This document shows positions 8,209 through 37,239 of a DNA stretch of 64,000 nt, piece after piece. This DNA is from Hyaloraphidium curvatum SAG 235-1 (Eukaryota; Fungi; Monoblepharomycota), in assembly GCA_025558095.1 (NCBI GenBank), contig JAIVFI010000019.1:62001-126000 (forward strand), written 5' to 3'. The notes beneath the pieces were generated by a model that saw only the letters and a list, made by a program, of their open reading frames with translations, was not told the DNA's origin and did not search any database. The position numbers and the translations under genes were made by a program. Position 1 is the first letter of the stretch, and each line of letters opens with the position of its first letter.

Positions 8209-11200
8209 TCAGTGCCCGAGGACGGTCTGCGCCCACGCCGCCTTGGCCCCCGCCTCGCCTCCCCGCGAAAGCACCACCTCGGTGACAAAGTCCGCGCCCT
8301 GCGGCAGCACGTACTCGGGATCGACGTTGGGCGACCACGCGTCGTGCCCGCCGCACCCCATCATGCGCGAATCCACGTGCACGTACACCTTTTCCGGGTC
8401 AGGCTTCAGCTCCCAGTCGTGCAGCGCCTTGTCGACCGCTTGCCACGGGAACGGCAGCGCCGAGAAGCCGTACCCGTCGCGGAGCTTGCCGTCCCTGGCC
8501 GCGCACGCGATGCCGATCGACCCTCCTACGCCGGAAAGGGCGACCCAGCGCGCGCCGGCGCGCCAGCCGCACTCGCCGGGGAACACGTACGGCTCGAACA
8601 GCTTCTCGGGGGTGCTCTCCCAGATCCCCTTGCGCACGCAGGCCACGCGGTCCGGGTAGGCCTCGTACGGGCCGAGGCCGGACCACCTGACCTTGGCTGC
8701 GGCCGATCTGGGCACGGCGAACTTGAAGCCCACGCGCGGGAGCGGGGGCAGCGACCCGGGCGGGGCGATCGTCGAGCAGAGCCTGATGTCGCCGTTGGCC
8801 TCGAACTCGTACCGCACGTGCGCGAGGATGACGGCGCCGGCCAGGGCGGCCCCCTTGGGCGCCACCATCTCGAACAGGGTCTCGACCGTCGTGCGCTTGC
8901 CGTCGGCAGCGTGGGCCACGATCGCCGTGCCGTCCTTGCCCGCCGGACGGCGCTCCATGCTGCCGAGGCCCATGCTCTTCCACCGCGCCGAGATGGAGAA
9001 GGGGCCGCCGCCGTAGTCGTTGTCGGTGCTGGCGCGCTCGATTCCGATGTCGACGGGCTCGGCGAGGAGCTCCTTGCCGTCGGGCGACTTCCACGAGAGG
9101 AGCCGGCCGCACTTGACGCCCACCACGGCGCTGCTGCCGTCGGCCATCTTGACGGCCAGGTCGCCCTTGGGGACGTCGAACGGGGCCGGGGCGCCCGAGG
9201 CTGCGGCTATGCCGTTGGCCATCTTGCCCTTGGAGGTCGCGAGTCCGGCGGCTAGCTCCGGTGCATCGAAGGAGGCGCGGAGGATCTCGGTGCCCTTGGG
9301 CAGGAAGTGCGTGCCGGCGGCGTTCTCGACAGTCACCTCGATCCACGCCTCGGTCGCCGCCTCGAGCTTGTTCCCGAGCAGCTTGGCCAGGGCGGCGGCG
9401 TCGCCGCCCGCCGCGGCCGCGAACCCCGGCAGCACGTCGGCGAGCTTGAGCGCCTGCTCCTTCTGCGGCGCGACGCCCTCGAGCCCCTTGACGGTCACCC
9501 ACTCGCCGCCGGCCTCGGCAGCGGCGTCGCACCCGACCCTCGCGCGGATCGAGACCGCAGCAAGGGGGCTGAAGTCGAACCTGTTTGTGACGACCAGCTG
9601 CCCGTCCTTGACCGCCAGCCCCACAGGGCACTGCTGCGCTGCGGCCTCGAGCGCCTGCGGGTGGGGGGTCCTGTCGGGGGCCAGGATGCCGTTGATGCAG
9701 AACTGCGCCGAGTTGGGTATGTCGCCAAAGTCGCCGCCGTAGCCGTACGCGGGCCTGTCCTTGGGGAAGCTCGCGGGGAGGTTGGGCAGGGCGGGGTCCA
9801 TGAGGATGCCCTGGTCGACCATGTCCCAGATGAAGCCGCCCTGCATGCGCGTGTTGAGGCGGTCGCGGAAGCGGCGCCAGTAGCCGGCGAGGCAGCCGCC
9901 CGAGTTGCCCATGGCGTGCGCGTACTGCGGGAATGCGTCGGGGTTCCGTTGGTTTCATTCATCCCCTGCAGCATGCAGAACGAGCCCACCTCGCATAAGA
10001 TGAGCGGGCGCCCCTTGGGATCCTCAGCGACGCTGCCGAGGCACTGCTCGGGTCGGAAGTACATGGGCACGATGATGTCGGTGGCATCGTTGAGGACGCC
10101 GCCGGACTCGTACCTGGAAGCATAGCGCTGCGGTCAGAACAGATGCATCGCATGCAAGTCGCGCGCGAAGCACTCACTGCACGGGCCGCCTCCCCCCGTC
10201 CCTGGCCCTCAGCCAGTCCGCCGCGGCCTGCGTGTTCCTCCCCATCCCGCTCTCGTTGCCCACGCTCCAGGCAAAGATGCACGGGTGGTTGGAATCCCGC
10301 ATCCACATGCGCGCGCACCGGCTGACGTAGGCCGCCGTCCAGTCGGGCGAGTCTGAGAGCGTGCCCGCGGGCTGCCCCGAAATCTGGAACCCGTGCGTCT
10401 CGAGGTCGCCCTCGTCGACCATGTACAGGCCGGCCTGGTCGCAGATGTCGCCCATGAGCTGGGACGAGGGGTAGTGCGCGGTGCGGATGCCGTTGAAGTT
10501 GAGCCGCTTGAGGAGCATGGCGTCGGAGGCCATGACCGACAGCGGGATGCCGCGGCCCATGGTGGCGTGGAATTCGGGGCGGTTGACGCCGCAGATGGTG
10601 ATGGGCGAGCCGTTGACGGTGACGAGACTGTTGGGCGCCGCGGTGATCTTGATGTCGACGAAGCCCGTGCGCACGGACTCGACGTCGAGCGGGGACGCGC
10701 CCGACTCGGCGTCGGCCTTGCTCGCGTGCAGGGAGATGACGGCCGTGTACAGATTCGGCGTCTCGGGGGTCCACGGCTTGGCGTTCGCCACGGCAATCGT
10801 GGCGCGGGCGGCGGCGGGCTTGTCGAAGGGCGCAAACTCGGGTTCCGACGCCGGGTCCCAGATCTTGTGAGCGGCTTCGAGCTCGGGGCTGGAGATGCCG
10901 CCGTCAGCGGCCGCCATCGCTGTGGCGACGGGCGCACCCGAGCCACCGTCGGCGCCCTCGTAGACCTCGACGCGGACAAAGTGCCCGGCTTTGGTGCCGG
11001 CCACTCCCTCGCACAGAACCTCGAAGGAGATCGTGCCCTCGCCGAGCGAGGCCTTGGTGCGGTAGTCGGCGATGGCGGCCTTGGGCTTCTTGACCAGGTA
11101 GGCCTCCCTGTAGATGCCGCTGATGTTCCACTTGTCCTGGTCCTCGATGTACGACCCGTCGCAGTAGCGCATGACCTCGGCGGCGATGACGTGCTCCGTG

Positions 11201-12018
11201 GCGGAGCGGTCGAGCAGGTCGGTCACGTCAAACTCGCACGGCAGCGCGGGGTCCTTGGAGAAGCCGGCGAACTTGCCGTCGACGTAGGCCTTCACGCACG
11301 AGTCGACGCCCTCGAAGACGAGCACGACGCGCTGGTCGTCGGCCTTCCACCGGTCGGGCAGCGCGATAGTGCGGCGGTACAGCCCGGTCGGGTAGGGGCC
11401 ACGCTCGCGGGGGTCGCGCGGCACAAAGTCCTTGTCCATCCAGGGCCTGTACTGCATCACGCCGCGGTCGTTGGCCTCGAAGGTGAACTTGCCAGTGCGT
11501 GCCGCGACGGGCGGGTTCTTCTCGCAGGCGTAGGTGGTGTTGGTGTAGATGGGGATGTCGCGCGTGGCCGCGGGCAGGCCCGAGGTCGGCAGCTGCCAGT
11601 GCGACGGCAGCATGATCGGGGCGAACGAGTCCGGGGGCAGGCCCTCGGCCTGCACCTTGGCGGCGGCCTCGTCGAAGCCGGGGGCGTTCCAGCCCTTGGG
11701 CGCGTCCTTGAGGTCGCCGACGAGCAGGAACTTCCAGCCGGGCGCGGGCTCGCCGGCCTCGCCGGTCAGCATGAGCACGTTGGGCGTGCACTCGCGCGCC
11801 AGCTTGGTCGGGTTCGCGGCGAACTTTGCCCAGAAGGCGCGCGCGGCATTGGCGTCGGGGAACGCGCGCATGGGCGCGTGGCCGGGCCTCCGCTTCCTGC
11901 CGACCACCCGCGGGTCGGCGTGGTCGGGCGAGCCGTCGGGAATGGGCCGCAGATACTTCTCGGCGAGGCGCTCCTCGAGCATCTTGTACGCCCGGCCGGG
12001 CGCCGCAAAGACCGACAT
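8209..12018 (-). CDS. lacZ: GH2 beta-galactosidase (LacZ/LAC4-like), 3 exons
   Basis: PIYTN, FEGVDS, DGSYIEDQDKWNISGIYREAYL, GVNRPE, NFNGIRTAHYP, WSVGNESG (acid/base Glu), RPLILCE|YAHAMGNS (nucleophile Glu), GGFIWDMVDQG, YGGDFGD, GLGPYEAYPDR. Introns 10114-10177 and 9925-9989. No signal peptide. Confidence 0.95.
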
Positions 12019-12702
12019 GGCGGCGAGGCGCAAGAGATCAAGGCCACCAAAATCCCGGCTTCCGGGAGGCCTGCAGCTGCGATTCGTCCAGCGGCCAAAA
12101 CGTCCGTGGGAGACTGCGAACGGAGGAACCCGTGGCATCTGTCAGCGCCGGCACACAACCCACTCGGACAGCTCAGTGGCGACGCTCACCGACCGCCTCT
12201 TGGCGATTGAATGCCACGCGATGCGTAAACGGTGACCGGCGATTCGGTCGGTGTTGACGGACTCGCCGGCAGGGCCCTCGCGAGCCCTTGAAACGCCACC
12301 ACCCCGAACCTACGCGGGACCAAACCGACGAAACACCCCTGGCCGTCCACCTGAAACCCCTCACCAGGCTTCCGCAACACCGCCTCCGTCTCGAGGTAGG
12401 GCAAGCGTTGACATTCCGGTGCTCCACACGCTGAAGACCGACTTTTCCGTGTTAAGGGCCCGGCACATCGCGCAGAATAGCGCGCTAACTCGGACGCCCA
12501 AGGTGGACACCGAAGGGACATCCTAAGGCCCGCTCCATACCTGACCAGTAGGTGGCTGTCGCCGGACCCCTTTGCTCCCCCCCCAGGGTGTCCTGACACC
12601 GTCCCTGTCCCCCTTTCCGCAACGCCGACGGGCAATCCCCGACTCGCGCCTGTCCTCCTCGGCGACCCTTCCTGGCTCCGTCCTGCACTCAAGAACACAA
12701 AC
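12019..12702. promoter_or_regulatory. Divergent intergenic region between beta-galactosidase and sugar permease (probable bidirectional promoter)
   Basis: Head-to-head gene arrangement only; no specific site identified. Confidence 0.5.
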
Positions 12703-14898
12703 ATGGCCCCCGCCGCCGCCGGGCCCGTGCCGGACGACTATCCCAAGGCCGTCACCGGCCGGAGCCTGAACACACTGTTCCTCCTGTCCCTGGTCGCCTT
12801 CCTCTGCTCGGCAACCTACGGCTACGATGGCTCGCTCATGTCGGGCATCAACGCCATGTACGTTTCAATCATCTGGGCAGCTCGCGGGCGCCGTGGCAGG
12901 TTGCTGACCGCACCTCCCAATCACGTGCGACCTCTACAGGAGCCAGTACCAGGACTTCTTCGGGTAGGCAGGGCCTTTCTTGTGCTTGGCTTGCTTCTTC
13001 TGATTCCGGACTTGCAGCGTCCAGCCCACCGGTGCCATGACCTCGCTCATCTTCTCCATCTACGTGGGTATCTTCAGGGTTTGTTCGACGCCTCTGACCC
13101 CTCCGGCGCAGAACGTCGGCAACATCTGCGCCGTGCCATTCTCGGGCCCCATCGCCGATCGCTTCGGCCGCAAGATCAGCATGGCCATCGGCTGCGGCAT
13201 CATCGTCGTCGGCGCCATCATCAACGGCACCTCGACCGTGCTGGCGCAGTTCATCGTCGGCCGGTTCGTCCTCGGCTTCGGCATCTGCATCGCCTCGGTC
13301 GGCGCGCCGTCGTGGGTCGTCGAGACCACGCCGCCCGAGTACCGCGGGCGCGTGACGGGCCTGTACAACACCTTCTGGTGCGTCTTTCCTCGCTTGCCGT
13401 CCCGATTAGCGGCTGACCCCGTCCCGCAGGTGGGTCGGCAACATCACGGCTTCGTGGACTCTCTACGGCACCGCCTACATCCAATCCGAATGGGCCTGGC
13501 GCATCCCGCTCTTCCTCCAATGCATCTTCGGCGGCTCCGTCTGCTTCCTCGTCTGGCTTCTGCCCGAGTCCCCCCGCTGGCTCGTGGCCAAGGGCCGCAA
13601 CGACGAGGCCCGCGCCGTGTTCACCAAGTACCACGGCGCCGGCGATCCCAACCACCCGATCGTGACGGTGCAGATGGAGGAGCTCATCGCGGCGCAGGAG
13701 GAGGAGGCGCGCAGGAAGGAGGCCGAAGCCGCCGTCACCTCGAGCAAGGGCGGCATCTCGCAGTACATCGGAGATTACTCGCCGCTCTACAACTCGCGCT
13801 CGGCGCTCTACCGCACCTTCATCCTCGCGTGCTTCTCCATCTTTGGCCAAGGATCGGGCAACGCCGTCGTCTCGTACTTCATGCCCGTCATGCTCGACGC
13901 CGGTTGGTCTCATCTTCGCTAGCCTGATCTCTGGAATTTGCCCTAACCCTAGCGTTCCTCGTGAACTCTTCAACATGGCTATTCTTGGATCGCCCTTTCC
14001 GAAGCTGGCATCACGGACCAATCGACGCAGCTCCTGCTGAACGCCATCAACTCGGTGCTCTCATTCTCGTCCGCCGTCACGGGCGCCTCGCTCATGGACA
14101 AGTTCGGCCGCCGCCCCCTGCTGCTCACCTCGACCTCGCTCGCCACCCTGCTCTTCACCGGCATCACCATCACCTCTGCGCTCGCTGCCGAGTCGACGAA
14201 CGTCAACTCGTCCCTTGGCACGGCGACGGTGGTGCTCATCTACGCCTTCGGCATCGTCTTCTCCTTCGCGTGGACCCCGATGCAGGTCCTCGGCCCCGCC
14301 GAGGTGCTCTCGAACGAGGCCCGCGCTAAAGGGATGAGCTTGAACAACCTTTTGGTCAATGCTGCTGGATTCTTCAACTCTTTTGTGACGCCGATCGCCA
14401 TGGGCGCGCTCGGGTGGTACGTGCTGCTGGCCTTCGCTTCGTGGACTCGTCTCCTGACGGGATCTTGATTGCATTCGCAGGAAGTGGTACATCTTTTACG
14501 TCATTTGGGACACACTCGAGGTCATCACCATCTACTTCTTCTTCCCCGAGACCAAGGGCCGCACCCTCGAGGAGCTCAACGCCGTCTTCGAGGCCAAGAA
14601 CCCCGTCAAGGAGTCTCTCAAGCCCCGCGCCGCCCCCGTGCTCGCAGAAGGCGAAGAAACGGTGCCAGAGGTCGCCGCGATCCCCAAGATGACCGACCTG
14701 GTGCGCGTGCCGACGGTGCCCGGGTTCCTGCCCGTCGCGCGCGTCGGCACGGGCGAGGACCGCTCGACCAACCAGCTGCGGAAGCGCACGATGACGGCGA
14801 CGGCTCTCGAGGCCGGGATGGCGGGCGAATCGGTTCAGCTCGGTGAGACGGCGCCGAAGATCGATGCGGTGCAGACGGATGTGGCGGCGCCGAAGTGA
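12703..14898 (+). CDS. MFS sugar porter, lactose permease/cellodextrin transporter (LAC12/CDT-like), multi-exon
   Basis: [88 protein letters not shown] and QxSGN are typical of the LAC12/CDT clade. Confidence 0.92.
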
Positions 14899-15307
14899 GG
14901 GTGATCGGAGGGGAAAAAAACGGCATTGTACATGCAGTCTGGGCCGCACAAGCTCATCGAGTGGAAAACTGTGATATCGCGGATGTCCTCCGCATTAACA
15001 TGCGTGCATCGTGCGCTGTTGCGGGAGGTCGAACCGTCGAGTCATCGCGATTGGCCGTCGGACGTCAGACCAACAATCCACTGGAACGGACGGCGGCAGA
15101 GCGCCAAATCGCCGGCTGCGGCCCAGATCGGCTTGTGGCCCTGTGTTTCAACGGGCCGTCGGCGGCTTCAGCACCATTTTTCTTGCGGGTGGCGTCAGAG
15201 AGACGAGGGCCCCGGAGCCAACGGACCCTGACCCCGAACTGACGGCCGTCCATTTGTCCCCCCCACATCTCCGCCGCCCCGCGCTGCCGCCCTCCGCGTT
15301 TCCCGCC

Positions 15308-16665
15308 ATGGCCGCATCGCAGCCCGCCGCGCCCGCTGCCGGGGAGTTCGACTTCACGTCGCACCCGCACCGGCGGTACAACCCGCTCAACGACACCTGG
15401 GTACTCGTCTCGCCGCACCGCGCCAAGCGGCCGTGGCTGGGCCAGACAGAGCAGCTGCCGCCCGACGACCGCCCGGAGTACGACCCCAAGTGGGATTCGC
15501 GAACTGCGGTTGCGGGGCACCCGTTTAACTCGTCGAACCCCACGACGGCAGGTGCTACCTGTGCCCCGGCAACGCCCGCTCCTCCGGCGCCGTCTCCAAC
15601 CCGCCGTACACGACCACCTACGTCTTCACCAACGACTTCCCCGCGCTGCTCCCGTCGCAGCCGCCCTACTCCCCCGCCGGCTCGCGCGAGGCCATCGGGC
15701 TCACCCCCGACCGCGCAGGCCTGCTCGACTCGCTCTACAAGGTCGAGGGGGACATGGGAACGTCGCGCGTGGTGTGCTTCTCGCCACGGCACGACCTGAC
15801 GCTCGCCGAGATGTCGGCCAAGGACCTCGAGGCCGTGGTGGACGTGTGGGTCGAGCAGTACAACGACCTGGCGACGCTGCCGTACGTGGGGTACGTGCAG
15901 ATCTTCGAGAACAAGGGCGCGGTGATGGGGTGCTCGGCGCCGCACCCGCACGGGCAGGTTCGTGGAGCCTGCCGCGCGTCCCCGGCCGCGTCTGAACGCG
16001 TCCGCAGATCTGGGCGACCGAGGAGGTCCCCACCGAGCCCGCCAAGGAGATATCGGCCTTCAAGAAGTACAAGGAAAAGAACGGCACCTGCCTCATGTGC
16101 GACTACGTGGCCAGCGAGCTCGCCGGGTCGAAGGCCCGGATCGTGTGCGAGAACGACTCGTTCGTGGCCATGGTGCCCTTCTGGGCCGTCTGGTGGGCAT
16201 ATTCTGCACCGCTATCGTCGCAGCTCACGCCTGACGCGCTTTGTGTGCAGGCCGTACGAGGTCATGATCGCAAGCAAGCGGCACCTCGCCGCCCTCCCGG
16301 ACCTCTCGGACAAGGAACGCGCCGACTACGCCGACCTGCTCCGCCGCGTGACGTGCCGGTACGACGACGTGTTCAAGTGCCCGTTCCCGTACTCGGCGGG
16401 GATCCACCAGAGCCCCACGGGCAAGGAGAAGACGGGCGATTTCCACCTGCACCACCACTTCTACCCGCCGCTGCTGAGGAGCGCAACGGTGAAGAAGTTC
16501 CTCGTCGGGTGCGTATTCCGCTCGGCATTGCAGTGGACGGTGCTGATCGTTTGGTGCTCCAGGTTCGAGATGCTCGGCGAGTCGCAGAGGGACCTGACTG
16601 CGGAGCAGGCGGCCGAGAGGCTGCGCGGGTGCTCCGAGGTGCACTACAAGCATGCGCAGAAGTAA
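15308..16665 (+). CDS. GAL7: Galactose-1-phosphate uridylyltransferase, multi-exon
   Basis: [57 protein letters not shown] (HPH catalytic), [28 protein letters not shown]. Confidence 0.97.
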
Positions 16666-26520: not shown

Positions 26521-28116
26521 TTAGAGACCCGGACACGCAAAGTCCAGGGTAACAAAGGTGCCGCCGCCGCGGAGGATGCTCCAAAGCGCTACGCCGACAG
26601 TCAGCATCGTGACGGCCATGCTCCTCAGAGTCGCAAACGTGACGACGAAGCCGAGCACCCGGCCTTTCCACTGGTCGACGTCCATGTAGCTCTTCAGCAC
26701 ACGGTCGTCAGCCTCAATAAGCGCGAGGCATGCCTCCAGCCGCGAAGTCGGAGGGAAGCGCCGCCGTGCCTTTGCAGAAAGCTCGCGAAGCGACCGACGG
26801 GCGGTGCGATACAGCTCCGTGACGCCTGAGATGTGCTGATTGGCCACGGCAACGTTGACCATGTCCGACGCGGCTCCAACGCCGAGGTACGCGAAAATGC
26901 CGAGGACGTACGCTGGGACGCAGTTGCCCACGGCGACGTTAGTGACGGCGGCGAGGAGGGTGCCGAGGACGTAGAAGCCGAGGTAGACGGCCAGGAACTC
27001 CATGAAAGTGAAGCGCTGTCGCCACAGCGCACTGAGCTCCTCGTGAAGTTGTTGGTACAGCTCGTAGTCGTCCGAAGGCTGGGCCGCCATTGCACCTTCC
27101 TTGTTGAGCGTGCCCGAGATGGGCTCGCCATGTGCGGATTTTCGAACCAGCTTCTCCCCAGGGCGGGGCTCCGAATCCAATTCCGAGAACAAGTTCCGTT
27201 CGTGGCGCGAAACCAGGGAATCCAGGGCGATCCAGACGGCACGGCGCTGTAGCCGCCGGGAGAGTTCGAGGCTGGCCACATTGGCCCGGAAAGTGGACCC
27301 CAGGATGCTGATGTACCCGTTGTTGACCCACCACAGGGCAATAATCACGACAAGGGAGAGGATGCCCCACCACGTCCCAATGGCAACTTCCCCGAACGTG
27401 ATGGCCATCGTCCACACCATGCCGAACAGGCTGCTGACCGTCAGAAGGCAGATCCTGGCCACCAAATCCAAAATGGAGTAGCCAGCAACCCTCGACATGA
27501 CGTCCCCCACGCAGGCCGGGCAGGGGCACAGCCCATCGCCGTCCTCGTGCGCGAGGAGAGGGGAACCCTCGGGTTCCTGGCCAACTAGCTCCGTCCAGCG
27601 AACGACGCCGGACAGATTATGCCCTGATACATCCCCGTCCGATCCTTTCTTGTGGACCGCGAATCGCAGGCTGTAGCGCGTGAACAGCGGCGGCAGCAAG
27701 AGCATGACCACGTTCAAGGATAGCATCGCAGAGAAGCCACCCCAGTAGTTCCGGCTCGAAAAATGGGGGAGGAGGGTGTTCGCGTGCCACAGTGCCCCCA
27801 GCATGACGAAGACGGCCCCGAGCATTAGCAAGTTGCGGAGCAGAGAGCGACGCGCCCACGGCGCCAGCCACAGATTGAGGACGACGAGGGCGTGAAGAGG
27901 TTTGCAGGCAGAAAGAATGGACAGAAACTCGGGAAGGGGGAGCTTGGGCCGCACATGCCGTTCCGCGAACACCGCGCCGAACGTTGGAGGGAGCGGAGGG
28001 GAGGCGGGGAAGAGCGCGGCCCACTCGGCGTTCGAGAATCCCGGTTGGTCGACACGGGCTTTGTCCTCAACGTCCAGCCCTAGTTCGGCGATGTGATTTG
28101 GCGGCGATTCCGCCAT
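26521..28116 (-). CDS. 7-TM membrane protein, gustatory-receptor-like/7TMIC candidate, intronless (paralog A)
   Basis: 531 aa, seven hydrophobic segments with alternating short and long loops, CPCPAC in loop 2-3, C-terminal KGRVLGFVVTFATLRSMAVTMLTVGVALWSIL. Confidence 0.8.
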   Translation of the reverse strand: MAESPPNHIAELGLDVEDKARVDQPGFSNAEWAALFPASPPLPPTFGAVFAERHVRPKLPLPEFLSILSACKPLHALVVLNLWLAPWARRSLLRNLLMLGAVFVMLGALWHANTLLPHFSSRNYWGGFSAMLSLNVVMLLLPPLFTRYSLRFAVHKKGSDGDVSGHNLSGVVRWTELVGQEPEGSPLLAHEDGDGLCPCPACVGDVMSRVAGYSILDLVARICLLTVSSLFGMVWTMAITFGEVAIGTWWGILSLVVIIALWWVNNGYISILGSTFRANVASLELSRRLQRRAVWIALDSLVSRHERNLFSELDSEPRPGEKLVRKSAHGEPISGTLNKEGAMAAQPSDDYELYQQLHEELSALWRQRFTFMEFLAVYLGFYVLGTLLAAVTNVAVGNCVPAYVLGIFAYLGVGAASDMVNVAVANQHISGVTELYRTARRSLRELSAKARRRFPPTSRLEACLALIEADDRVLKSYMDVDQWKGRVLGFVVTFATLRSMAVTMLTVGVALWSILRGGGTFVTLDFACPGL

Positions 28117-28241
28117 GGAGCCTCAGGTTGAAGAGGGGTGCGGACCGCAGTAGCGAGTTGGCTGCCGCGCGATCGACGTCACGTTTCGTTGTCTGGCCGT
28201 CTCCCACATCTAAATCGCGGAGCCGACCGCCGAAGTCGCCC

Positions 28242-29888
28242 ATGGAGGGCGCAACGCGTGAAGAAGCCGACAGCCGCGGCAACGGCGCGTCGGAAAAGCC
28301 GCCCCTCTCCTTCCTCACGGGGGATGAGCTCCTTTGCCTCCTGCCCGCTCCCGTGGCCCCCGCGGCCGGAATCGGCGTGCCAGCTCAAGAGGATCCCGCT
28401 GCGGCAGCCCGGAACGCGCGTCCGCTGACGGCCGCGGCGGTGAAAGAAGTCGTTGCCGCCGCGGAAGATCCGGTGCTGGAATGGTTGACGCGCATCTCTC
28501 TCGCCCTGGCCCCGTACGCGGCGCGTTCGAGGTTCCGGATCGGCCTGTGCCATCTTATCAGCATCTCTACCATCATTCCTTTCCTCTGGATTGCCGGGAT
28601 CCCGTATGGATTCGGCCGGAAACAGCTCGTTGCCACCACCGTGGCCTTCAGTCTCGAGTGCGCGTTTTATTCGTTGCTCGCTACGAACATCGGCTGGTTT
28701 GCGGGACGCCGAAGCGGGGCGCGACCGGCTCCGTCGAAGGAGGATGACCCGGAAGGAGGGGAAGCCGCAGGCGATAGCCCAGTCCCAGGCGGATTCTTTG
28801 CGGCCGCAACTCTCGACGTCTGGCCGGATTCGTCCTTCTGGCGGTACCTCATTCTCTGTCAATCCGGTGCACCCCGGAACCAGCTTTTCCTGATGCACAT
28901 TGATGCAGACGGTTCGAATTGCTGTTGCCCACGCAAATCCTGCGCCGGTTCGGTCGCATCCCGTGCCGGCCTTGTACGCAGTGTCACCCTCGCTTTCTTT
29001 TCGCTCGTGGTCTTGCTGAGCTACGTGACTAAGTTTTTTACGGCTATGGTGACCCTCGGCGGACAAATGTGGACGACCGCGTGGACGCTTGCGGGCATCC
29101 TTTGGATCCTTTCGTCTTGCAACAACGAATTTGTATCCACGTTCGGTGGTGCCGGAACCTCGGACAACCTGGCCGCGAGGGAACTTGAACGGAAACTCAC
29201 AGTCCGTGCCGTGCGTCGGTCATTGGAGGCCCTTGTGGAACGCCTTCAGGGCCTCGTGGAGGGGCCTGCTGATGCGAAGACAGCCGCATGTGAAAGATGG
29301 TACGCTTCTCTGGTTCCCCTTCTTGCAGCCAGGTGGCGACAGGACGTTCTCTTGCCGCAGTACGCCGCGCTAGCTGGAGTTTTCTTCATCGCCGAGACAA
29401 CTGCCTTCATCATTTACGTGGTACGTAACGTAATCCTGTCGATCCTCTGATGGCGTCTGAACCATCTTCAATCCTCGTTCCAGACCACGGGCAACTGCGT
29501 TCCAGTCTACGTGATCGCTCTGCTGTTGATGGGATACTCCGGTCTCATGTACCCCCTCTTCAACGCAGCGGTCGGCAACGGGCGCATCACGCAGACCACG
29601 GCCCTCCTCCGCTCGGCCTCTCTTTCCCTCAGCGAACTCGAGCTGGCGTGCACAGAAGCTCAGCAACCCCTTGCGCGCCGCATCGCGGCGCACCGGGCCA
29701 GGCTCCGCGACCTGGAGGAGGTCCACGTGGATGGTGCAGGCGTGCGGCTCTTCGGAGCGCGGGTTACGGCCAGCCTAGTGCGCAAGATAATGGCAGCCAC
29801 GGTGACGGCGGTGTTTGCAGCGTGGACGGTGCTTCGCGCCCTGGGGGTCGTGCTGACCATGGAAATGGTCTGTCCGGCGACGTCTTGA
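28242..29888 (+). CDS. 7-TM membrane protein, divergent paralog B, 2 exons
   Basis: Shared motifs CCCPRKSCAG, LERKLTVRAV..SLEALV, GNCVPVYV, RLFGARVTASLVRKI..VFAAWTVLR...MVCP; intron 29421-29483. Confidence 0.8.
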
Positions 29889-30038
29889 TTTTGCGATGCA
29901 CGACCAATCGCAGCACTCACTGACGCTAACGTCGCATGCAAATCGTCGCTTATCTAGAAAGTTTTGCTGAATGTGTATGATTTGGCCGTTCTATTGACGT
30001 CTGACCATGTCGCCAGCTCCGATCCCCGGCCGCCTTGC

Positions 30039-31604
30039 CTATGCAGAAAGTAAATACAGACCCGGACATGCAAAATCCGGGGTCACAAAGGTACCCCCGT
30101 TGCGAAGGATAGTCCACAGCGCCACGCCGGCCGTCAACATCGTGGCGAGCACGCTCCTCAGCGCCGCAAAGGTGACCACGAACCCGAGGATCCTGCCCTT
30201 CCACTGCTCCACGTCCGTGTAGCTCTCCAGCACCCGATCATCCGCCTCCACGAGGGCCAGGCAGGTTTCGAGCCGCGGGCTCGGGGGGAGCTGGCGCCTC
30301 GCGCCGGCGGAGATCTCGCGCAGCGCGCGGCGGGCGGATCGGTACAGCTCCGTGACCCCCGAGATGTGCTGGTTGGCCACGGCGACGTTGATCATGTCCG
30401 ACGCGGTTCCAACGCCGAGGTAGGCGAACAAGCCGAGCACGTATGTGGGAACGCAGTTGCCGACGGCGACGTTGATCACTGCGGCCAAGACGATCCCGAG
30501 GACGTAGAAGCCGAGGTAGACCGCCAGGAACTCCATGAAGGTGAAGCGCTGGCGCCAGAGCGCGCTTAGCTCCTCGTGGAGCCCCTGGTAGAGCTCGCGC
30601 TTCGAACCGTGCATCAGGGCGGGTTCGGCGACCGATCCCCAAGCAAGTTTCTCATCGGAGCCCAGCTCCGCGTCCGACGCCGCAGACAACCTCTGCTCGT
30701 GCCGCGACACGAGGGCATCCAGTGCCATCCAAACCGCACGGCGCTGCAGCCTCCGCGAGAGATCCAGGCTGGCCACGTTGGCGCGGAACTGCGCACCGAG
30801 GATGCTGACGTAACCGTTGTTGATCCACACGACGGCGATCAGCAGCACCAGGGAGAGGACGCCCCACCAAGTGCGCGAGACCTCGCGGAAGGTGATCCCC
30901 ATGGTCCACACCGTTGTGAAGAGGCCCGCGGCCGCCATCAGGCACAATCTCGCCCCCACGTCGGCGAACGAGTAGGCGGCGACCCTCGACATGACGTCCC
31001 CCACGCACGCCGGGCAGGGGCACAGGTCGTCCCCGTCCTTGTGCGCCAAAAGCGAGGCATCCGGTTCCCCGGCGACGAGTTCGGCCCAGCGGACGACCGC
31101 GGATAGGTTGTGGGCCGACATGTCGCCGTCCGGGTCCTTCCTGTAGGCCGCGAAGCGCAGCCTGTACCGGGTGAAGAGCGGCGGCAAGAAAAGCATGACG
31201 ACGTCCCAGGATACTATCGCCGCGAATCCGCCCCAGTAATTTCGGTTGGAAAAGATCGGAAGGAGGCTGTTCGCGTACCACAGCGCTCCCAGCATGACGA
31301 TATTGGCCCCAAACATAAGCACGTTGCGGAGGAGCGAGCGGCGCGCCCACGGTGCCAGCCACAAGTTGAGCACCACGAGGGCATGCAAAGATCTTGAGGC
31401 AGAGAGAATCGAGAGGAAGCGCGGCATGGGGAGCTTGGACCGCGCATGGCGTTCGCTCGCGGGTCCGAACGTCGGGGGAAGTGGGGGGGAGGACGGGAAG
31501 AGCGCGGCCCACTCCGCGTCCGAGAATCCCGGCGGGCCGCAATTCGGCTTCGTCTCGATGTCGAGCGAACACTCTGCGCGGCCGTTTGGCGGCGGGTCCG
31601 CCAT
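30039..31604 (-). CDS. 7-TM membrane protein, paralog C (close to A), intronless
   Basis: 521 aa, colinear and highly similar to 26521-28116 along its length. Confidence 0.8.
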   Translation of the reverse strand: MADPPPNGRAECSLDIETKPNCGPPGFSDAEWAALFPSSPPLPPTFGPASERHARSKLPMPRFLSILSASRSLHALVVLNLWLAPWARRSLLRNVLMFGANIVMLGALWYANSLLPIFSNRNYWGGFAAIVSWDVVMLFLPPLFTRYRLRFAAYRKDPDGDMSAHNLSAVVRWAELVAGEPDASLLAHKDGDDLCPCPACVGDVMSRVAAYSFADVGARLCLMAAAGLFTTVWTMGITFREVSRTWWGVLSLVLLIAVVWINNGYVSILGAQFRANVASLDLSRRLQRRAVWMALDALVSRHEQRLSAASDAELGSDEKLAWGSVAEPALMHGSKRELYQGLHEELSALWRQRFTFMEFLAVYLGFYVLGIVLAAVINVAVGNCVPTYVLGLFAYLGVGTASDMINVAVANQHISGVTELYRSARRALREISAGARRQLPPSPRLETCLALVEADDRVLESYTDVEQWKGRILGFVVTFAALRSVLATMLTAGVALWTILRNGGTFVTPDFACPGLYLLSA

Positions 31605-35934: not shown

Positions 35935-37239
35935 ATGGCCGCAAACGGGACGGCCGCGGTCCCGCTTCTCTCCGTTTCGCCGACGGTGCTGTCACAGGAA
36001 CGCCTCGATGCCCTCATGGCCGCGTTCCGCGAGACGTACCCCAAGCACACCGACAAGCCGTTCGTCTTCTCTGCTGCGGGGCGCACCGAGATTAGCGGGA
36101 ACCACACGGACCACCAGAACGGCCGCGTCGTCGCCGCCGGAATCGACCTCTCCGCAGCAATGGCCTGCGTGCCCAGCGGCACCTCCGTCTTCAAGCTCGT
36201 CTCCAAGGGCTGGGACCCCGTGGTCGTGGACCTCGCGTCCCTGGACCCCGTCAAGTCGGAGGAAGGCACCACCGCGTCCCTGATCCGCGGCGTGGCACAG
36301 GGGCTGTCCAAGAAGGGCTACAAGATCGCGGGCCTGGATGCCGTTGCTAGCTCCACGGTGCTTCCTGGCTCCGGCCTCTCTTCTTCGGCAGCTTTCGAGG
36401 TTCTCATCACCTACGCGCTCATGGGGACCCTGAACGACCCCCTGCCGGCGGGCGCCGAGCCGCTCAACCCCAGCGACGTCGCCATCATCTCCCAATGGGC
36501 CGAGAACGTGCACTTTGGCAAACCCTGCGGCCTCATGGATCAGATGGCCTCGGCGCACGGCTCGGTCGTCGCCATCGACTTCGGGACCAAGCCTCCCAAG
36601 GTCGAGAAGCTGCCCTTTGACCTCGCCTCGACCGGCTACGTTCTTGTCATCGTCAACAGCGGCGGCTCGCATGCCGACCTCACCCCCGAGTACTCGGCGA
36701 TCCGGTCCGAGATGAACTCGGTCGCCAAGTGGGTCTCGGGCGGTCGCACGGAGCTCCTCGGCGAATGCAACGCCGACGAATTCCTGGGCATGGTGCGCAA
36801 GCTCCGCGAGTCGGGTGTTTCCGACAGGGCCATTCTCCGCGCTTTGCACTTTTTCGAGGAGTGCGGCCGCGTGGACAAAATCGCGGAGCTGCTTCGCACC
36901 AAGCCCCTGGACATGCCCGCCTTCCTCGATACGGTGCTCTCCTCGGGCAGATCCTCTGCCATGTACCTGCAAAACCTGCACGCCGAGTCGCACCCCGAGG
37001 AGCAGCCCGTCGGGCTTGCACTGGCGATGACGGAGCAGTTCCTGTCGGCCAGGAAGGTGCCCGGCAAGCACCCCGGCGCGTACAGGGTTCACGGAGGCGG
37101 GTTCGCGGGCACGATCCAGGCTTACATTCCCAAGGACATCCTGCCCGAGTACATCGAAATGATCGAGGGGTATCTTGGCAAGGGGAAAGTGATGCAGATC
37201 GCTATCAGGGCCGAGTCTTCGGGGCGGGTCATGTACTAG
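35935..37239 (+). CDS. galK: Galactokinase (GHMP), bacterial-type, intronless
   Basis: AAGRTEISGNHTDHQNG, LPGSGLSSSAAFE, GKPCGLMDQMAS, RVHGGGFAGTIQA. Confidence 0.92.
   Translation: MAANGTAAVPLLSVSPTVLSQERLDALMAAFRETYPKHTDKPFVFSAAGRTEISGNHTDHQNGRVVAAGIDLSAAMACVPSGTSVFKLVSKGWDPVVVDLASLDPVKSEEGTTASLIRGVAQGLSKKGYKIAGLDAVASSTVLPGSGLSSSAAFEVLITYALMGTLNDPLPAGAEPLNPSDVAIISQWAENVHFGKPCGLMDQMASAHGSVVAIDFGTKPPKVEKLPFDLASTGYVLVIVNSGGSHADLTPEYSAIRSEMNSVAKWVSGGRTELLGECNADEFLGMVRKLRESGVSDRAILRALHFFEECGRVDKIAELLRTKPLDMPAFLDTVLSSGRSSAMYLQNLHAESHPEEQPVGLALAMTEQFLSARKVPGKHPGAYRVHGGGFAGTIQAYIPKDILPEYIEMIEGYLGKGKVMQIAIRAESSGRVMY

What the first reader, a model, noticed from the sequence alone, without database searches (positions are those of the whole stretch)
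8209..16665. Eukaryotic 'lac-gal' cluster: beta-galactosidase <- -> lactose permease -> GAL7
Seen: a cytosolic LacZ-type GH2 with both catalytic Glu, head-to-head (684 bp) with a LAC12/CDT-like porter, and GALT 409 bp further on. Known: Kluyveromyces has the divergent LAC4-LAC12 pair and yeasts have GAL1-10-7 clusters, at separate loci. Here uptake, hydrolysis and Gal-1-P disposal are contiguous and all three genes have introns. Inference: an independently assembled beta-galactoside catabolic cluster; the natural substrate may be algal or plant galactosides rather than milk lactose.
Basis: partly seen in the sequence, partly recalled or inferred. Interest (0 to 1): 0.85.

Follow-up and report, generated by a model that had tools for sequence, protein, structure and literature searches.

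The report
Chytrid beta-galactosidase, sugar porter, GALT cluster
In the early-diverging fungus Hyaloraphidium curvatum, a LacZ-type beta-galactosidase, a sugar transporter and the genome's only galactose-1-phosphate uridylyltransferase lie side by side and are all transcribed, which looks like a home-made version of the yeast lactose and galactose clusters; its function is untested.

Summary
On 8.5 kb of the public Hyaloraphidium curvatum assembly lie three genes. The first is a 1226-aa cytosolic five-domain GH2 (minus strand, CDS 12018..8209). The second is a 597-aa MFS sugar porter, head to head with it, 684 bp between the start codons. The third, 409 bp further on, is the genome's only GALT. 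Spliced transcript contigs confirm every intron they cover and show that all three genes are expressed.

The GH2 keeps both catalytic Glu and 14 of 15 LacZ active-site residues; His357 is Pro. It is not a LAC4/BgaD orthologue. It sits in a clade whose other named members are ochrophyte algae, and an AU test rejects one fungal clade. The porter is fungal-type and has no close paralogue. GALT is chytrid-type. None of nine fetched contexts of homologues repeats any pairing, and the two GH2 paralogues have no such partners. So lineage-specific, independent assembly is supported.

Not shown: co-regulation, the porter's substrate (LAC12/CDT kinship could not be tested), and enzyme activity. GALE and mutarotase are unlinked; a divergent GalK-like gene lies 19 kb away.

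Verdict: a real new variant of the known permease-hydrolase cluster, extended by a Leloir gene, of moderate interest.

The parts
8209..9924 (-). GH2 beta-galactosidase, coding exon 3 (YAHAMGNS... to the stop at 8209-8211): end of the TIM barrel, domain 4 and domain 5 (Bgal_small_N, with the Trp999 equivalent)
9925..9989 (-). GH2 intron (65 nt, GT..AG)
   Evidence: spliced contig; boundaries
9990..10113 (-). GH2 coding exon 2 (YESGG...LILCE). It ends with the nucleophile Glu (LacZ Glu537)
10114..10177 (-). GH2 intron (64 nt, GTGAGT..CAG). The position is shared, within 1 nt, with eukaryote-like metagenome relatives L036 and L037
10178..12018 (-). GH2 coding exon 1 from ATG 12018 (MSVFAAPG...): long N-terminal extension, sugar-binding domain, Ig-like domain, and the first half of the TIM barrel with ETHG and NESG (Glu461)
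12019..12393 (-). GH2 5' untranslated region: 12019-12113, intron 12114-12189 (76 nt), and a first exon inside 12190-12393. This first exon overlaps or abuts the first exon of the divergent porter transcript
   Evidence: record 3 carries a minus-strand and plus-strand introns in one contig
12190..12702 (+). Porter 5' untranslated region: first exon ending at about 12395, intron 12396-12456, exon 12457-12551, intron 12552-12693, then 12694-12702
12703..14898 (+). MFS sugar porter CDS, 597 codons plus stop, in 7 coding exons: 12703-12857, 12940-12963, 13018-13063, 13112-13377, 13430-13902, 14005-14416, 14481-14898. Motifs DRFGRK, PESPRWL, DKFGRR and [10 protein letters not shown]. The mRNA runs to at least 14961
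15308..16665 (+). GALT (galactose-1-phosphate uridylyltransferase), 377 aa, about 5 exons. Intron 15490-15551 is confirmed by a transcript contig. It has the HPH active site and a CxxC zinc site, and is the only GALT in the genome
35935..37239 (+). Loosely linked, intronless GalK-like GHMP kinase (GALK1/bacterial type, divergent), 19 kb from GALT. Membership of the cluster is uncertain

Best explanation
This is a lineage-specific catabolic gene neighbourhood of the monoblepharid (chytrid-grade) fungus Hyaloraphidium curvatum.

Proposed working:
1. The sugar porter imports a beta-galactoside. Candidates are lactose-like disaccharides, galacto-oligosaccharides or galactosyl-glycerol from algal and plant galactolipids.
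2. The cytosolic five-domain LacZ-type GH2, transcribed divergently from an overlapping or abutting promoter region, releases galactose.
3. A galactokinase encoded elsewhere phosphorylates the galactose.
4. The adjacent, single-copy GALT passes galactose-1-phosphate into the Leloir pathway, avoiding build-up of toxic Gal-1-P.

Shown: gene identities, exon structures, transcription, conservation of catalytic residues, a mosaic origin (an ochrophyte-type GH2, a fungal-type porter, a chytrid-type GALT) and absence of the arrangement in every relative examined.

Inferred: the substrate, co-regulation, and that the linkage to GALT was selected rather than accidental.
For: Identity and architecture: five GH2 domains; E. 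coli LacZ is the best solved relative, 414 bits; 14 of 15 LacZ active-site residues, including Glu461, Glu537 and Trp999; GALT HPH and CxxC motifs; sugar-porter motifs.

Transcription and splicing: one search shows spliced contigs over all three genes, and one contig joins the two 5' ends.

Single copy: GALT; porter without a close paralogue.

Only this one of three GH2 paralogues has a porter or GALT beside it.

Organism and annotated products.

Mosaic origin: GH2 clade with Ectocarpus, Ochromonadaceae, Mallomonas and Epipyxis; AU p = 6e-81 against one fungal clade; porter nearest to fungal porters at 44-53% identity per exon; the next-best GALT hits are chytrids.

Precedent for permease-hydrolase pairs and for Gal-1-P toxicity: PMC11497787 and PMC10774165.
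Against: There are no expression data under galactoside versus glucose conditions.

No shared promoter motif and no CGG-N11-CCG site was found in the three upstream regions.

The porter's nearest homologues are uncharacterised, and none of the six contexts looked at lies next to a GH2, so its substrate rests on context alone.

LacZ His357 is Pro here. By my knowledge of the E. coli enzyme, that residue contacts the galactose 3-OH.

GALT is the housekeeping copy and would be needed whatever its neighbours are. The rest of the Leloir pathway is not adjacent.
Confidence: 0.6

Rival explanations
1. Only the divergent GH2-porter pair is a functional unit, a classic permease-hydrolase couple. GALT is a housekeeping gene that happens to lie next door.
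For: GALT is single-copy and is needed for any galactose metabolism. It appears to have its own transcript: depth drops in 14900-15099 and a separate contig begins after it. No shared upstream motif was found. GALE, mutarotase and the Gal1-type kinase are unlinked.
Against: The chance that the only GALT lies within two genes of one of three LacZ-type GH2 genes is about 0.001 (my estimate). A GalK-like gene is also within 19 kb.
Confidence: 0.25
2. The cluster handles a glycoside other than a plain beta-D-galactopyranoside. The His357-to-Pro change and the long N-terminal extension of this GH2 sub-clade would mark an altered sugar specificity, and the porter would carry that other substrate.
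For: His357 is Pro in the window gene, in its paralogue C31 and in P0413. It varies (N, T, S) in other members of the clade, while nearly all the other LacZ-type rows of the table keep His; the one exception is Paenibacillus, which has Asn. The porter's specificity is unknown.
Against: The other 14 LacZ active-site residues are kept, including the Na+/Mg2+ ligands, Trp568, Phe601, Asn604 and Trp999. The adjacency of GALT makes sense only if galactose is released.
Confidence: 0.1
3. The whole arrangement is accidental adjacency in a gene-dense genome and has no functional meaning.
For: Intergenic distances in the window are short throughout. No synteny was seen elsewhere.
Against: The joint chance is of the order of 1e-5 (my estimate). 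The pairing matches a well-documented functional pattern in other fungi (PMC10774165). The pair shows head-to-head transcription with touching 5' ends.
Confidence: 0.05

Closest known systems
LAC12-LAC4 cluster of Kluyveromyces lactis/marxianus and Candida (Sungouiella) intermedia (PMC6926475; PMC11497787)
   Same: A divergently transcribed sugar-porter permease and an intracellular GH2 beta-galactosidase.
   Different: The GH2 is not orthologous. The window enzyme scores 283 bits against LAC4 (3OB8) and 414 against E. coli LacZ, and it lies in another clade. Here a Leloir gene is attached; in the yeasts GAL1-GAL7-GAL10 is a separate cluster. The genes here have introns, and no Lac9/Gal4-type sites were found.
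bgaD-lacpA couple of Aspergillus nidulans and NCU00810-NCU00809 of Neurospora crassa (PMC10774165, citing Fekete 2012 and Orosz 2014)
   Same: An adjacent intracellular GH2 and lactose permease in a filamentous fungus, induced by galactose or arabinose in those species.
   Different: The Pezizomycotina-type GH2, represented here by Cryphonectria, groups with the unclustered H. curvatum paralogue on contig C44, not with the clustered gene. No GALT is reported beside those pairs. Whether the porter is orthologous could not be tested.
GAL1-GAL10-GAL7 clusters of budding yeasts, Schizosaccharomyces and Cryptococcus, and the GALLAC cluster of C. intermedia (PMC11497787)
   Same: Physical linkage of Leloir genes, and in GALLAC a link between lactose and galactose genes.
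   Different: Only GALT is present here. GALE is on contig C6, the mutarotases on C35, C6 and C24, and a Gal1-type kinase on C26. No regulator gene was recognised.
E. coli lac operon (lacZ-lacY)
   Same: It works the same way: a LacZ-type five-domain enzyme plus a dedicated importer. LacZ is the closest solved structure.
   Different: The porter belongs to another MFS family (sugar porter, not LacY). The genes are eukaryotic, spliced and separately transcribed.

Membership tests
GH2 LacZ-type (five-domain) beta-galactosidase | Domain order: sugar-binding domain, Ig-like domain, TIM barrel, domain 4, Bgal_small_N | tested here: met
   Pfam on P0412 finds all five. Exon-wise hits.
GH2 LacZ-type (five-domain) beta-galactosidase | Acid/base Glu461 (NESG) and nucleophile Glu537 (CEYAHAMGNS) | tested here: met
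GH2 LacZ-type (five-domain) beta-galactosidase | The full set of galactose and metal-binding residues: N102, D201, H357, H391, E416, H418, M502, Y503, H540, W568, F601, N604, W999 | tested here: inconclusive
   12 of these 13 are kept. His357 is Pro in the window gene, in C31 and in P0413.
GH2 LacZ-type (five-domain) beta-galactosidase | Beta-galactosidase activity | not testable with these tools
   Needs an enzyme assay.
Fungal lactose/cellodextrin permease clade of the sugar-porter family (Lac12, LacpA, CDT-1/2, NCU00809) | Sugar_tr fold with the family motifs (GRK/R loops, PESPR, PETKG) | tested here: met
Fungal lactose/cellodextrin permease clade of the sugar-porter family (Lac12, LacpA, CDT-1/2, NCU00809) | Placement in a tree with the characterised members | not testable with these tools
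   No characterised sequence could be fetched by reference. The nearest homologues are uncharacterised; some are auto-named 'lactose permease'.
Fungal lactose/cellodextrin permease clade of the sugar-porter family (Lac12, LacpA, CDT-1/2, NCU00809) | Lactose or beta-galactoside transport | not testable with these tools
   Needs an uptake or complementation assay.
Class I GALT (HIT superfamily) | GalP_UDP_transf N- and C-terminal domains, the HPH nucleophile motif and a CxxC zinc site | tested here: met
Yeast LAC cluster (LAC4-LAC12), as a homologous unit | Orthology of the hydrolase to LAC4 | tested here: not met
   Different GH2 clade. AU test.
Fungal GAL cluster (GAL1-GAL10-GAL7) | Kinase, epimerase and transferase adjacent to one another | tested here: not met
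   Only GALT is here. A GalK-like gene lies 19 kb away. GALE is on another contig.
Metabolic gene cluster in the functional sense | Co-regulation of the members by the substrate | not tested
   Only one transcriptome-like run of unknown growth condition was available. All three genes are present in it.

The most novel reading that the evidence does not exclude
This would be a carbohydrate-catabolic gene cluster in a chytrid-grade fungus, built as a mosaic. The parts are a beta-galactosidase of a clade otherwise known from ochrophyte algae (ancient eukaryote-to-eukaryote transfer or a relic gene), recruited next to a native fungal porter and the native GALT. It would serve a planktonic saprobe feeding on galactolipid-derived galactosides of algae. 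If so, permease-hydrolase-Leloir clustering arose independently outside the Dikarya.
Probability: 0.25. Interest if true: 0.6.

Novelty: new variant of a known kind. Interest (0 to 1): 0.42.

Why it matters
Catabolic gene clusters are well studied in yeasts and moulds but hardly at all in early-diverging fungi. My full-text searches found no paper linking Hyaloraphidium to a galactosidase, and none pairing 'GAL cluster' with Chytridiomycota.

If this cluster is co-regulated, it is an independent replay of the LAC and GAL solutions with non-orthologous parts. That would be useful evidence that selection, for example against toxic Gal-1-P, drives such clustering. It would also offer a new LacZ-type enzyme lineage with a Pro in place of His357 for enzymology.

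Tried and rejected
1. Synteny. I fetched nine contexts: three around GH2 relatives (L036, L037, L039), five around porter relatives (L033, L034/35, L040, L041, L042) and one around a chytrid GALT (L038). None holds two of the three gene kinds within 8-10 kb. Gonapodya and other monoblepharids could not be reached. H. curvatum's own records are withheld by the context tool.

2. Regulatory motifs. No CGG-N11-CCG site and no shared word of 12 or more bases occurs among the GH2/porter intergenic region, the GALT upstream region and the GalK-like upstream region. One shared 11-mer between the last two is within chance.

3. Porter subfamily. The representative search with exon 8, two name look-ups and the Atlas gave only 'sugar porter' with sporadic 'lactose permease' auto-names. 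I rejected the claim 'LAC12/CDT-like' as unproven, not as false.

4. Recent bacterial transfer of the GH2. Rejected. The gene has three introns, one at a position shared with eukaryotic metagenome relatives, it has the host's GC content, and it sits in a eukaryotic clade.

5. My first reading of the 654-aa ORF from ATG 12138 as the N-terminus. Rejected: that ATG lies inside a 5'UTR intron. The start is ATG 12018, as in P0412.

6. Joined spliced model. Its exons were searched apart by reference. For the GH2 and GALT I used the database proteins P0412 and P0121 that the tools returned.
Full report
**Organism.** The window is G000:C19:62001-126000 of a 31.9-Mb, 55-contig genome of about 66% GC. 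The annotated NCBI proteins of Hyaloraphidium curvatum map onto it. The GALT P0121 (377 aa) maps exon by exon to window 15308-16662. The GH2 P0412 (1226 aa) maps to 12018..8212. The contig lengths recorded for these proteins (721,311 and, for the paralogue P0411, 572,809) fit the assembly; contig C31 is 572,809 bases. So this is the public assembly of H. curvatum, a monoblepharid 'chytrid'. I found no paper linking this species to a galactosidase or a GAL cluster.

**Observation.** All three genes are real and lie at the stated places. One public run (X1) consists of contigs that skip GT..AG introns, so it behaves as a transcriptome. It covers all three genes.

The gene models it supports, with boundaries checked, are:
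- GH2, minus strand: CDS 12018-10178, 10113-9990 and 9924-8209, plus a 5'UTR intron at 12114-12189. The ATG at 12138 is therefore intronic, and the start is ATG 12018, as in P0412.
- Porter, plus strand: two 5'UTR introns, then seven coding exons from ATG 12703 to the stop at 14896-14898, 597 codons in all.
- GALT, plus strand: ATG 15308 to the stop at 16663-16665. One intron (15490-15551) is seen in the contigs. The other three are inferred from the mapping of P0121.

One 917-nt contig carries the minus-strand intron 12114-12189 together with five plus-strand introns. This means that reads of the two divergent mRNAs overlap by at least one assembly word inside 12190-12393. The two genes therefore share a promoter region with touching or overlapping 5' ends. 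This is suggestive rather than proven, because contigs cannot show transcript ends.

**The GH2.** It has the five LacZ domains. E. coli LacZ is its best solved relative at 414 bits. K. lactis LAC4 scores 283 bits. In an alignment anchored on an Enterobacter LacZ, 14 of 15 LacZ active-site positions are kept: N102, D201, H391, E416, H418, E461, M502, Y503, E537, H540, W568, F601, N604 and W999. His357 is Pro in this gene, in its paralogue on C31 and in the nearest outside relative P0413. From my knowledge of the E. coli enzyme, His357 contacts the galactose 3-OH in the transition state. Activity is therefore likely, but specificity or rate may differ. The N-terminus (MSVFAAPGRAYKMLEERL...) shows no signal peptide, so a cytosolic location is inferred.

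**Origin of the GH2.** The genome has three LacZ-type genes. I built a 45-row maximum-likelihood tree.
- The window gene and the C31 paralogue are sisters (99), and P0413 from a Logan assembly joins them (100).
- All three sit in an 18-row clade (100). Its other named members are Ectocarpus, Ochromonadaceae sp., Mallomonas and Epipyxis, all ochrophyte stramenopiles. The rest are unnamed metagenome or transcriptome sequences.
- The third paralogue (C44) groups with Streptomyces and the Pezizomycotina enzyme of Cryphonectria. It scores 485 bits against LAC4.
- Forcing the H. curvatum genes and Cryphonectria into one clade costs 325 log-likelihood units (p-AU 6e-81). I named that group after seeing the tree, which is a caveat.
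- The intron after ...RRPVQ is at the same place, within 1 nt, in two eukaryote-like metagenome contigs. The gene also has the host's GC content.

It is therefore an old eukaryotic gene, not a recent bacterial import. Whether it reached the Hyaloraphidium lineage by transfer or survived there as a relic cannot be told from an unrooted tree.

**The porter.** It carries the sugar-porter motifs and has no close paralogue; the next-best hit in the genome is about 32% identical over exon 7. An exhaustive profile search with exon 8 found nothing above 52% identity. The full-length hits are fungal sugar porters from Orbilia, Coleophoma, Verticillium, Penicillium, Fusarium, Umbelopsis and the chytrids Cladochytrium and Rhizophlyctis. 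Several are auto-named 'lactose permease' and none is characterised. Identity per exon to the best of them is 44-53%.

**GALT.** It has both Pfam domains, the [11 protein letters not shown] active site and a CYLCPG zinc site. It is the only copy in the genome, and its next-best relatives are chytrids.

**Is the arrangement inherited?** In nine fetched neighbourhoods none repeats any pairing. These were three around GH2 relatives, five around porter relatives and one around the GALT of Gaertneriomyces. The loci of the two GH2 paralogues hold no porter and no GALT. Together with the three different histories of the parts, this supports assembly within the Hyaloraphidium lineage.

**Rest of the pathway.**
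- A galactokinase signature lies in the window itself, at 35935-37239. It is an intronless, divergent GALK1/bacterial-type kinase with low scores: 116 bits against a cut-off of 499. It is 19 kb from GALT, behind unrelated genes.
- A Gal1/GALK2-type kinase lies on contig C26, directly after an NAD-dependent epimerase/dehydratase gene.
- The true GALE is on C6 and the mutarotases are on C35, C6 and C24.

The cluster therefore covers uptake, hydrolysis and the transferase step only.

**Regulation.** No Gal4/Lac9-type CGG-N11-CCG site and no shared long word occurs in the three upstream regions. Co-regulation is untested.

**Comparison with known systems.**
- Divergent permease-GH2 pairs are known: LAC12-LAC4 in yeasts, bgaD-lacpA in A. 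nidulans and NCU00809-NCU00810 in N. crassa. They are described as a recurrent pattern for disaccharide transporters and hydrolases (PMC10774165; PMC6926475).
- GAL1-7-10 clusters are also known, as is a GALLAC cluster that couples lactose and galactose genes (PMC11497787). That paper also notes that loss of GAL7 blocks growth on lactose, probably through Gal-1-P toxicity. This gives a plausible selective reason for keeping GALT beside the pair.
- What is new here is the host (a chytrid-grade fungus), the non-orthologous GH2 of an alga-associated clade, and the direct attachment of GALT.

**Verdict.** This is a new variant of a known kind and is of moderate interest. The strongest doubts are the porter's unknown specificity, the His357-to-Pro change, and the possibility that GALT is merely a neighbour.

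Noticed in passing
window 35935-37239 (+): An intronless, divergent GalK-like GHMP kinase (GALK1/bacterial type; galactokinase signature 52 bits, but far below the NCBIfam equivalog cut-offs) lies 19 kb from the only GALT. I found only weak and equal similarity to bacterial, archaeal and human GalK (59 bits each), so a recent transfer is not evident.
   Followed up: partly
G000:C26:331872-335475 (L026:1288-2511 and L030:1210-2532): An NAD-dependent epimerase/dehydratase gene lies directly upstream, on the same strand, of a Gal1/GALK2-type kinase gene. It may be a second small GAL-like pair, reminiscent of GAL10 or ORF-X next to GAL1 in yeast clusters. The true galE is elsewhere, at C6:819581-820537.
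   Followed up: partly
window 12190-12393: One transcript contig joins the first exon of the minus-strand GH2 mRNA to the first exons of the plus-strand porter mRNA. The divergent transcripts therefore seem to overlap head to head. Both have 5'UTR introns.
   Followed up: partly
window about 10560 (GVNRPEFH in GH2 exon 1); also L007 and P0413: LacZ His357 is replaced by Pro in a three-member sub-clade (the window gene, the C31 paralogue and the Logan protein P0413). It is variable (N, T, S) in other members of the ochrophyte-type GH2 clade.
   Followed up: partly
G000:C44:102031-105042 (L006:2031-5042, minus): The third GH2 paralogue is of the Arthrobacter/LAC4/Pezizomycotina type (600 bits to 9M0E, 485 bits to LAC4). 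It is not next to any porter. Its neighbour is a DnaJ/zuotin-like gene.
   Followed up: partly
L036:12010-12075 and L037:12550-12715: Two eukaryote-like metagenome contigs (42% and 50% GC) carry GH2 relatives with an intron at the same VQ|YESGG position as the window gene. The gene caller split them into two ORFs there.
   Followed up: partly
window 26521-31604 and 491-2512: Earlier notes of the scan flag a tandem 7-TM gustatory-receptor-like cluster and a CotA-type multicopper oxidase in this window. I did not examine them.
   Followed up: no
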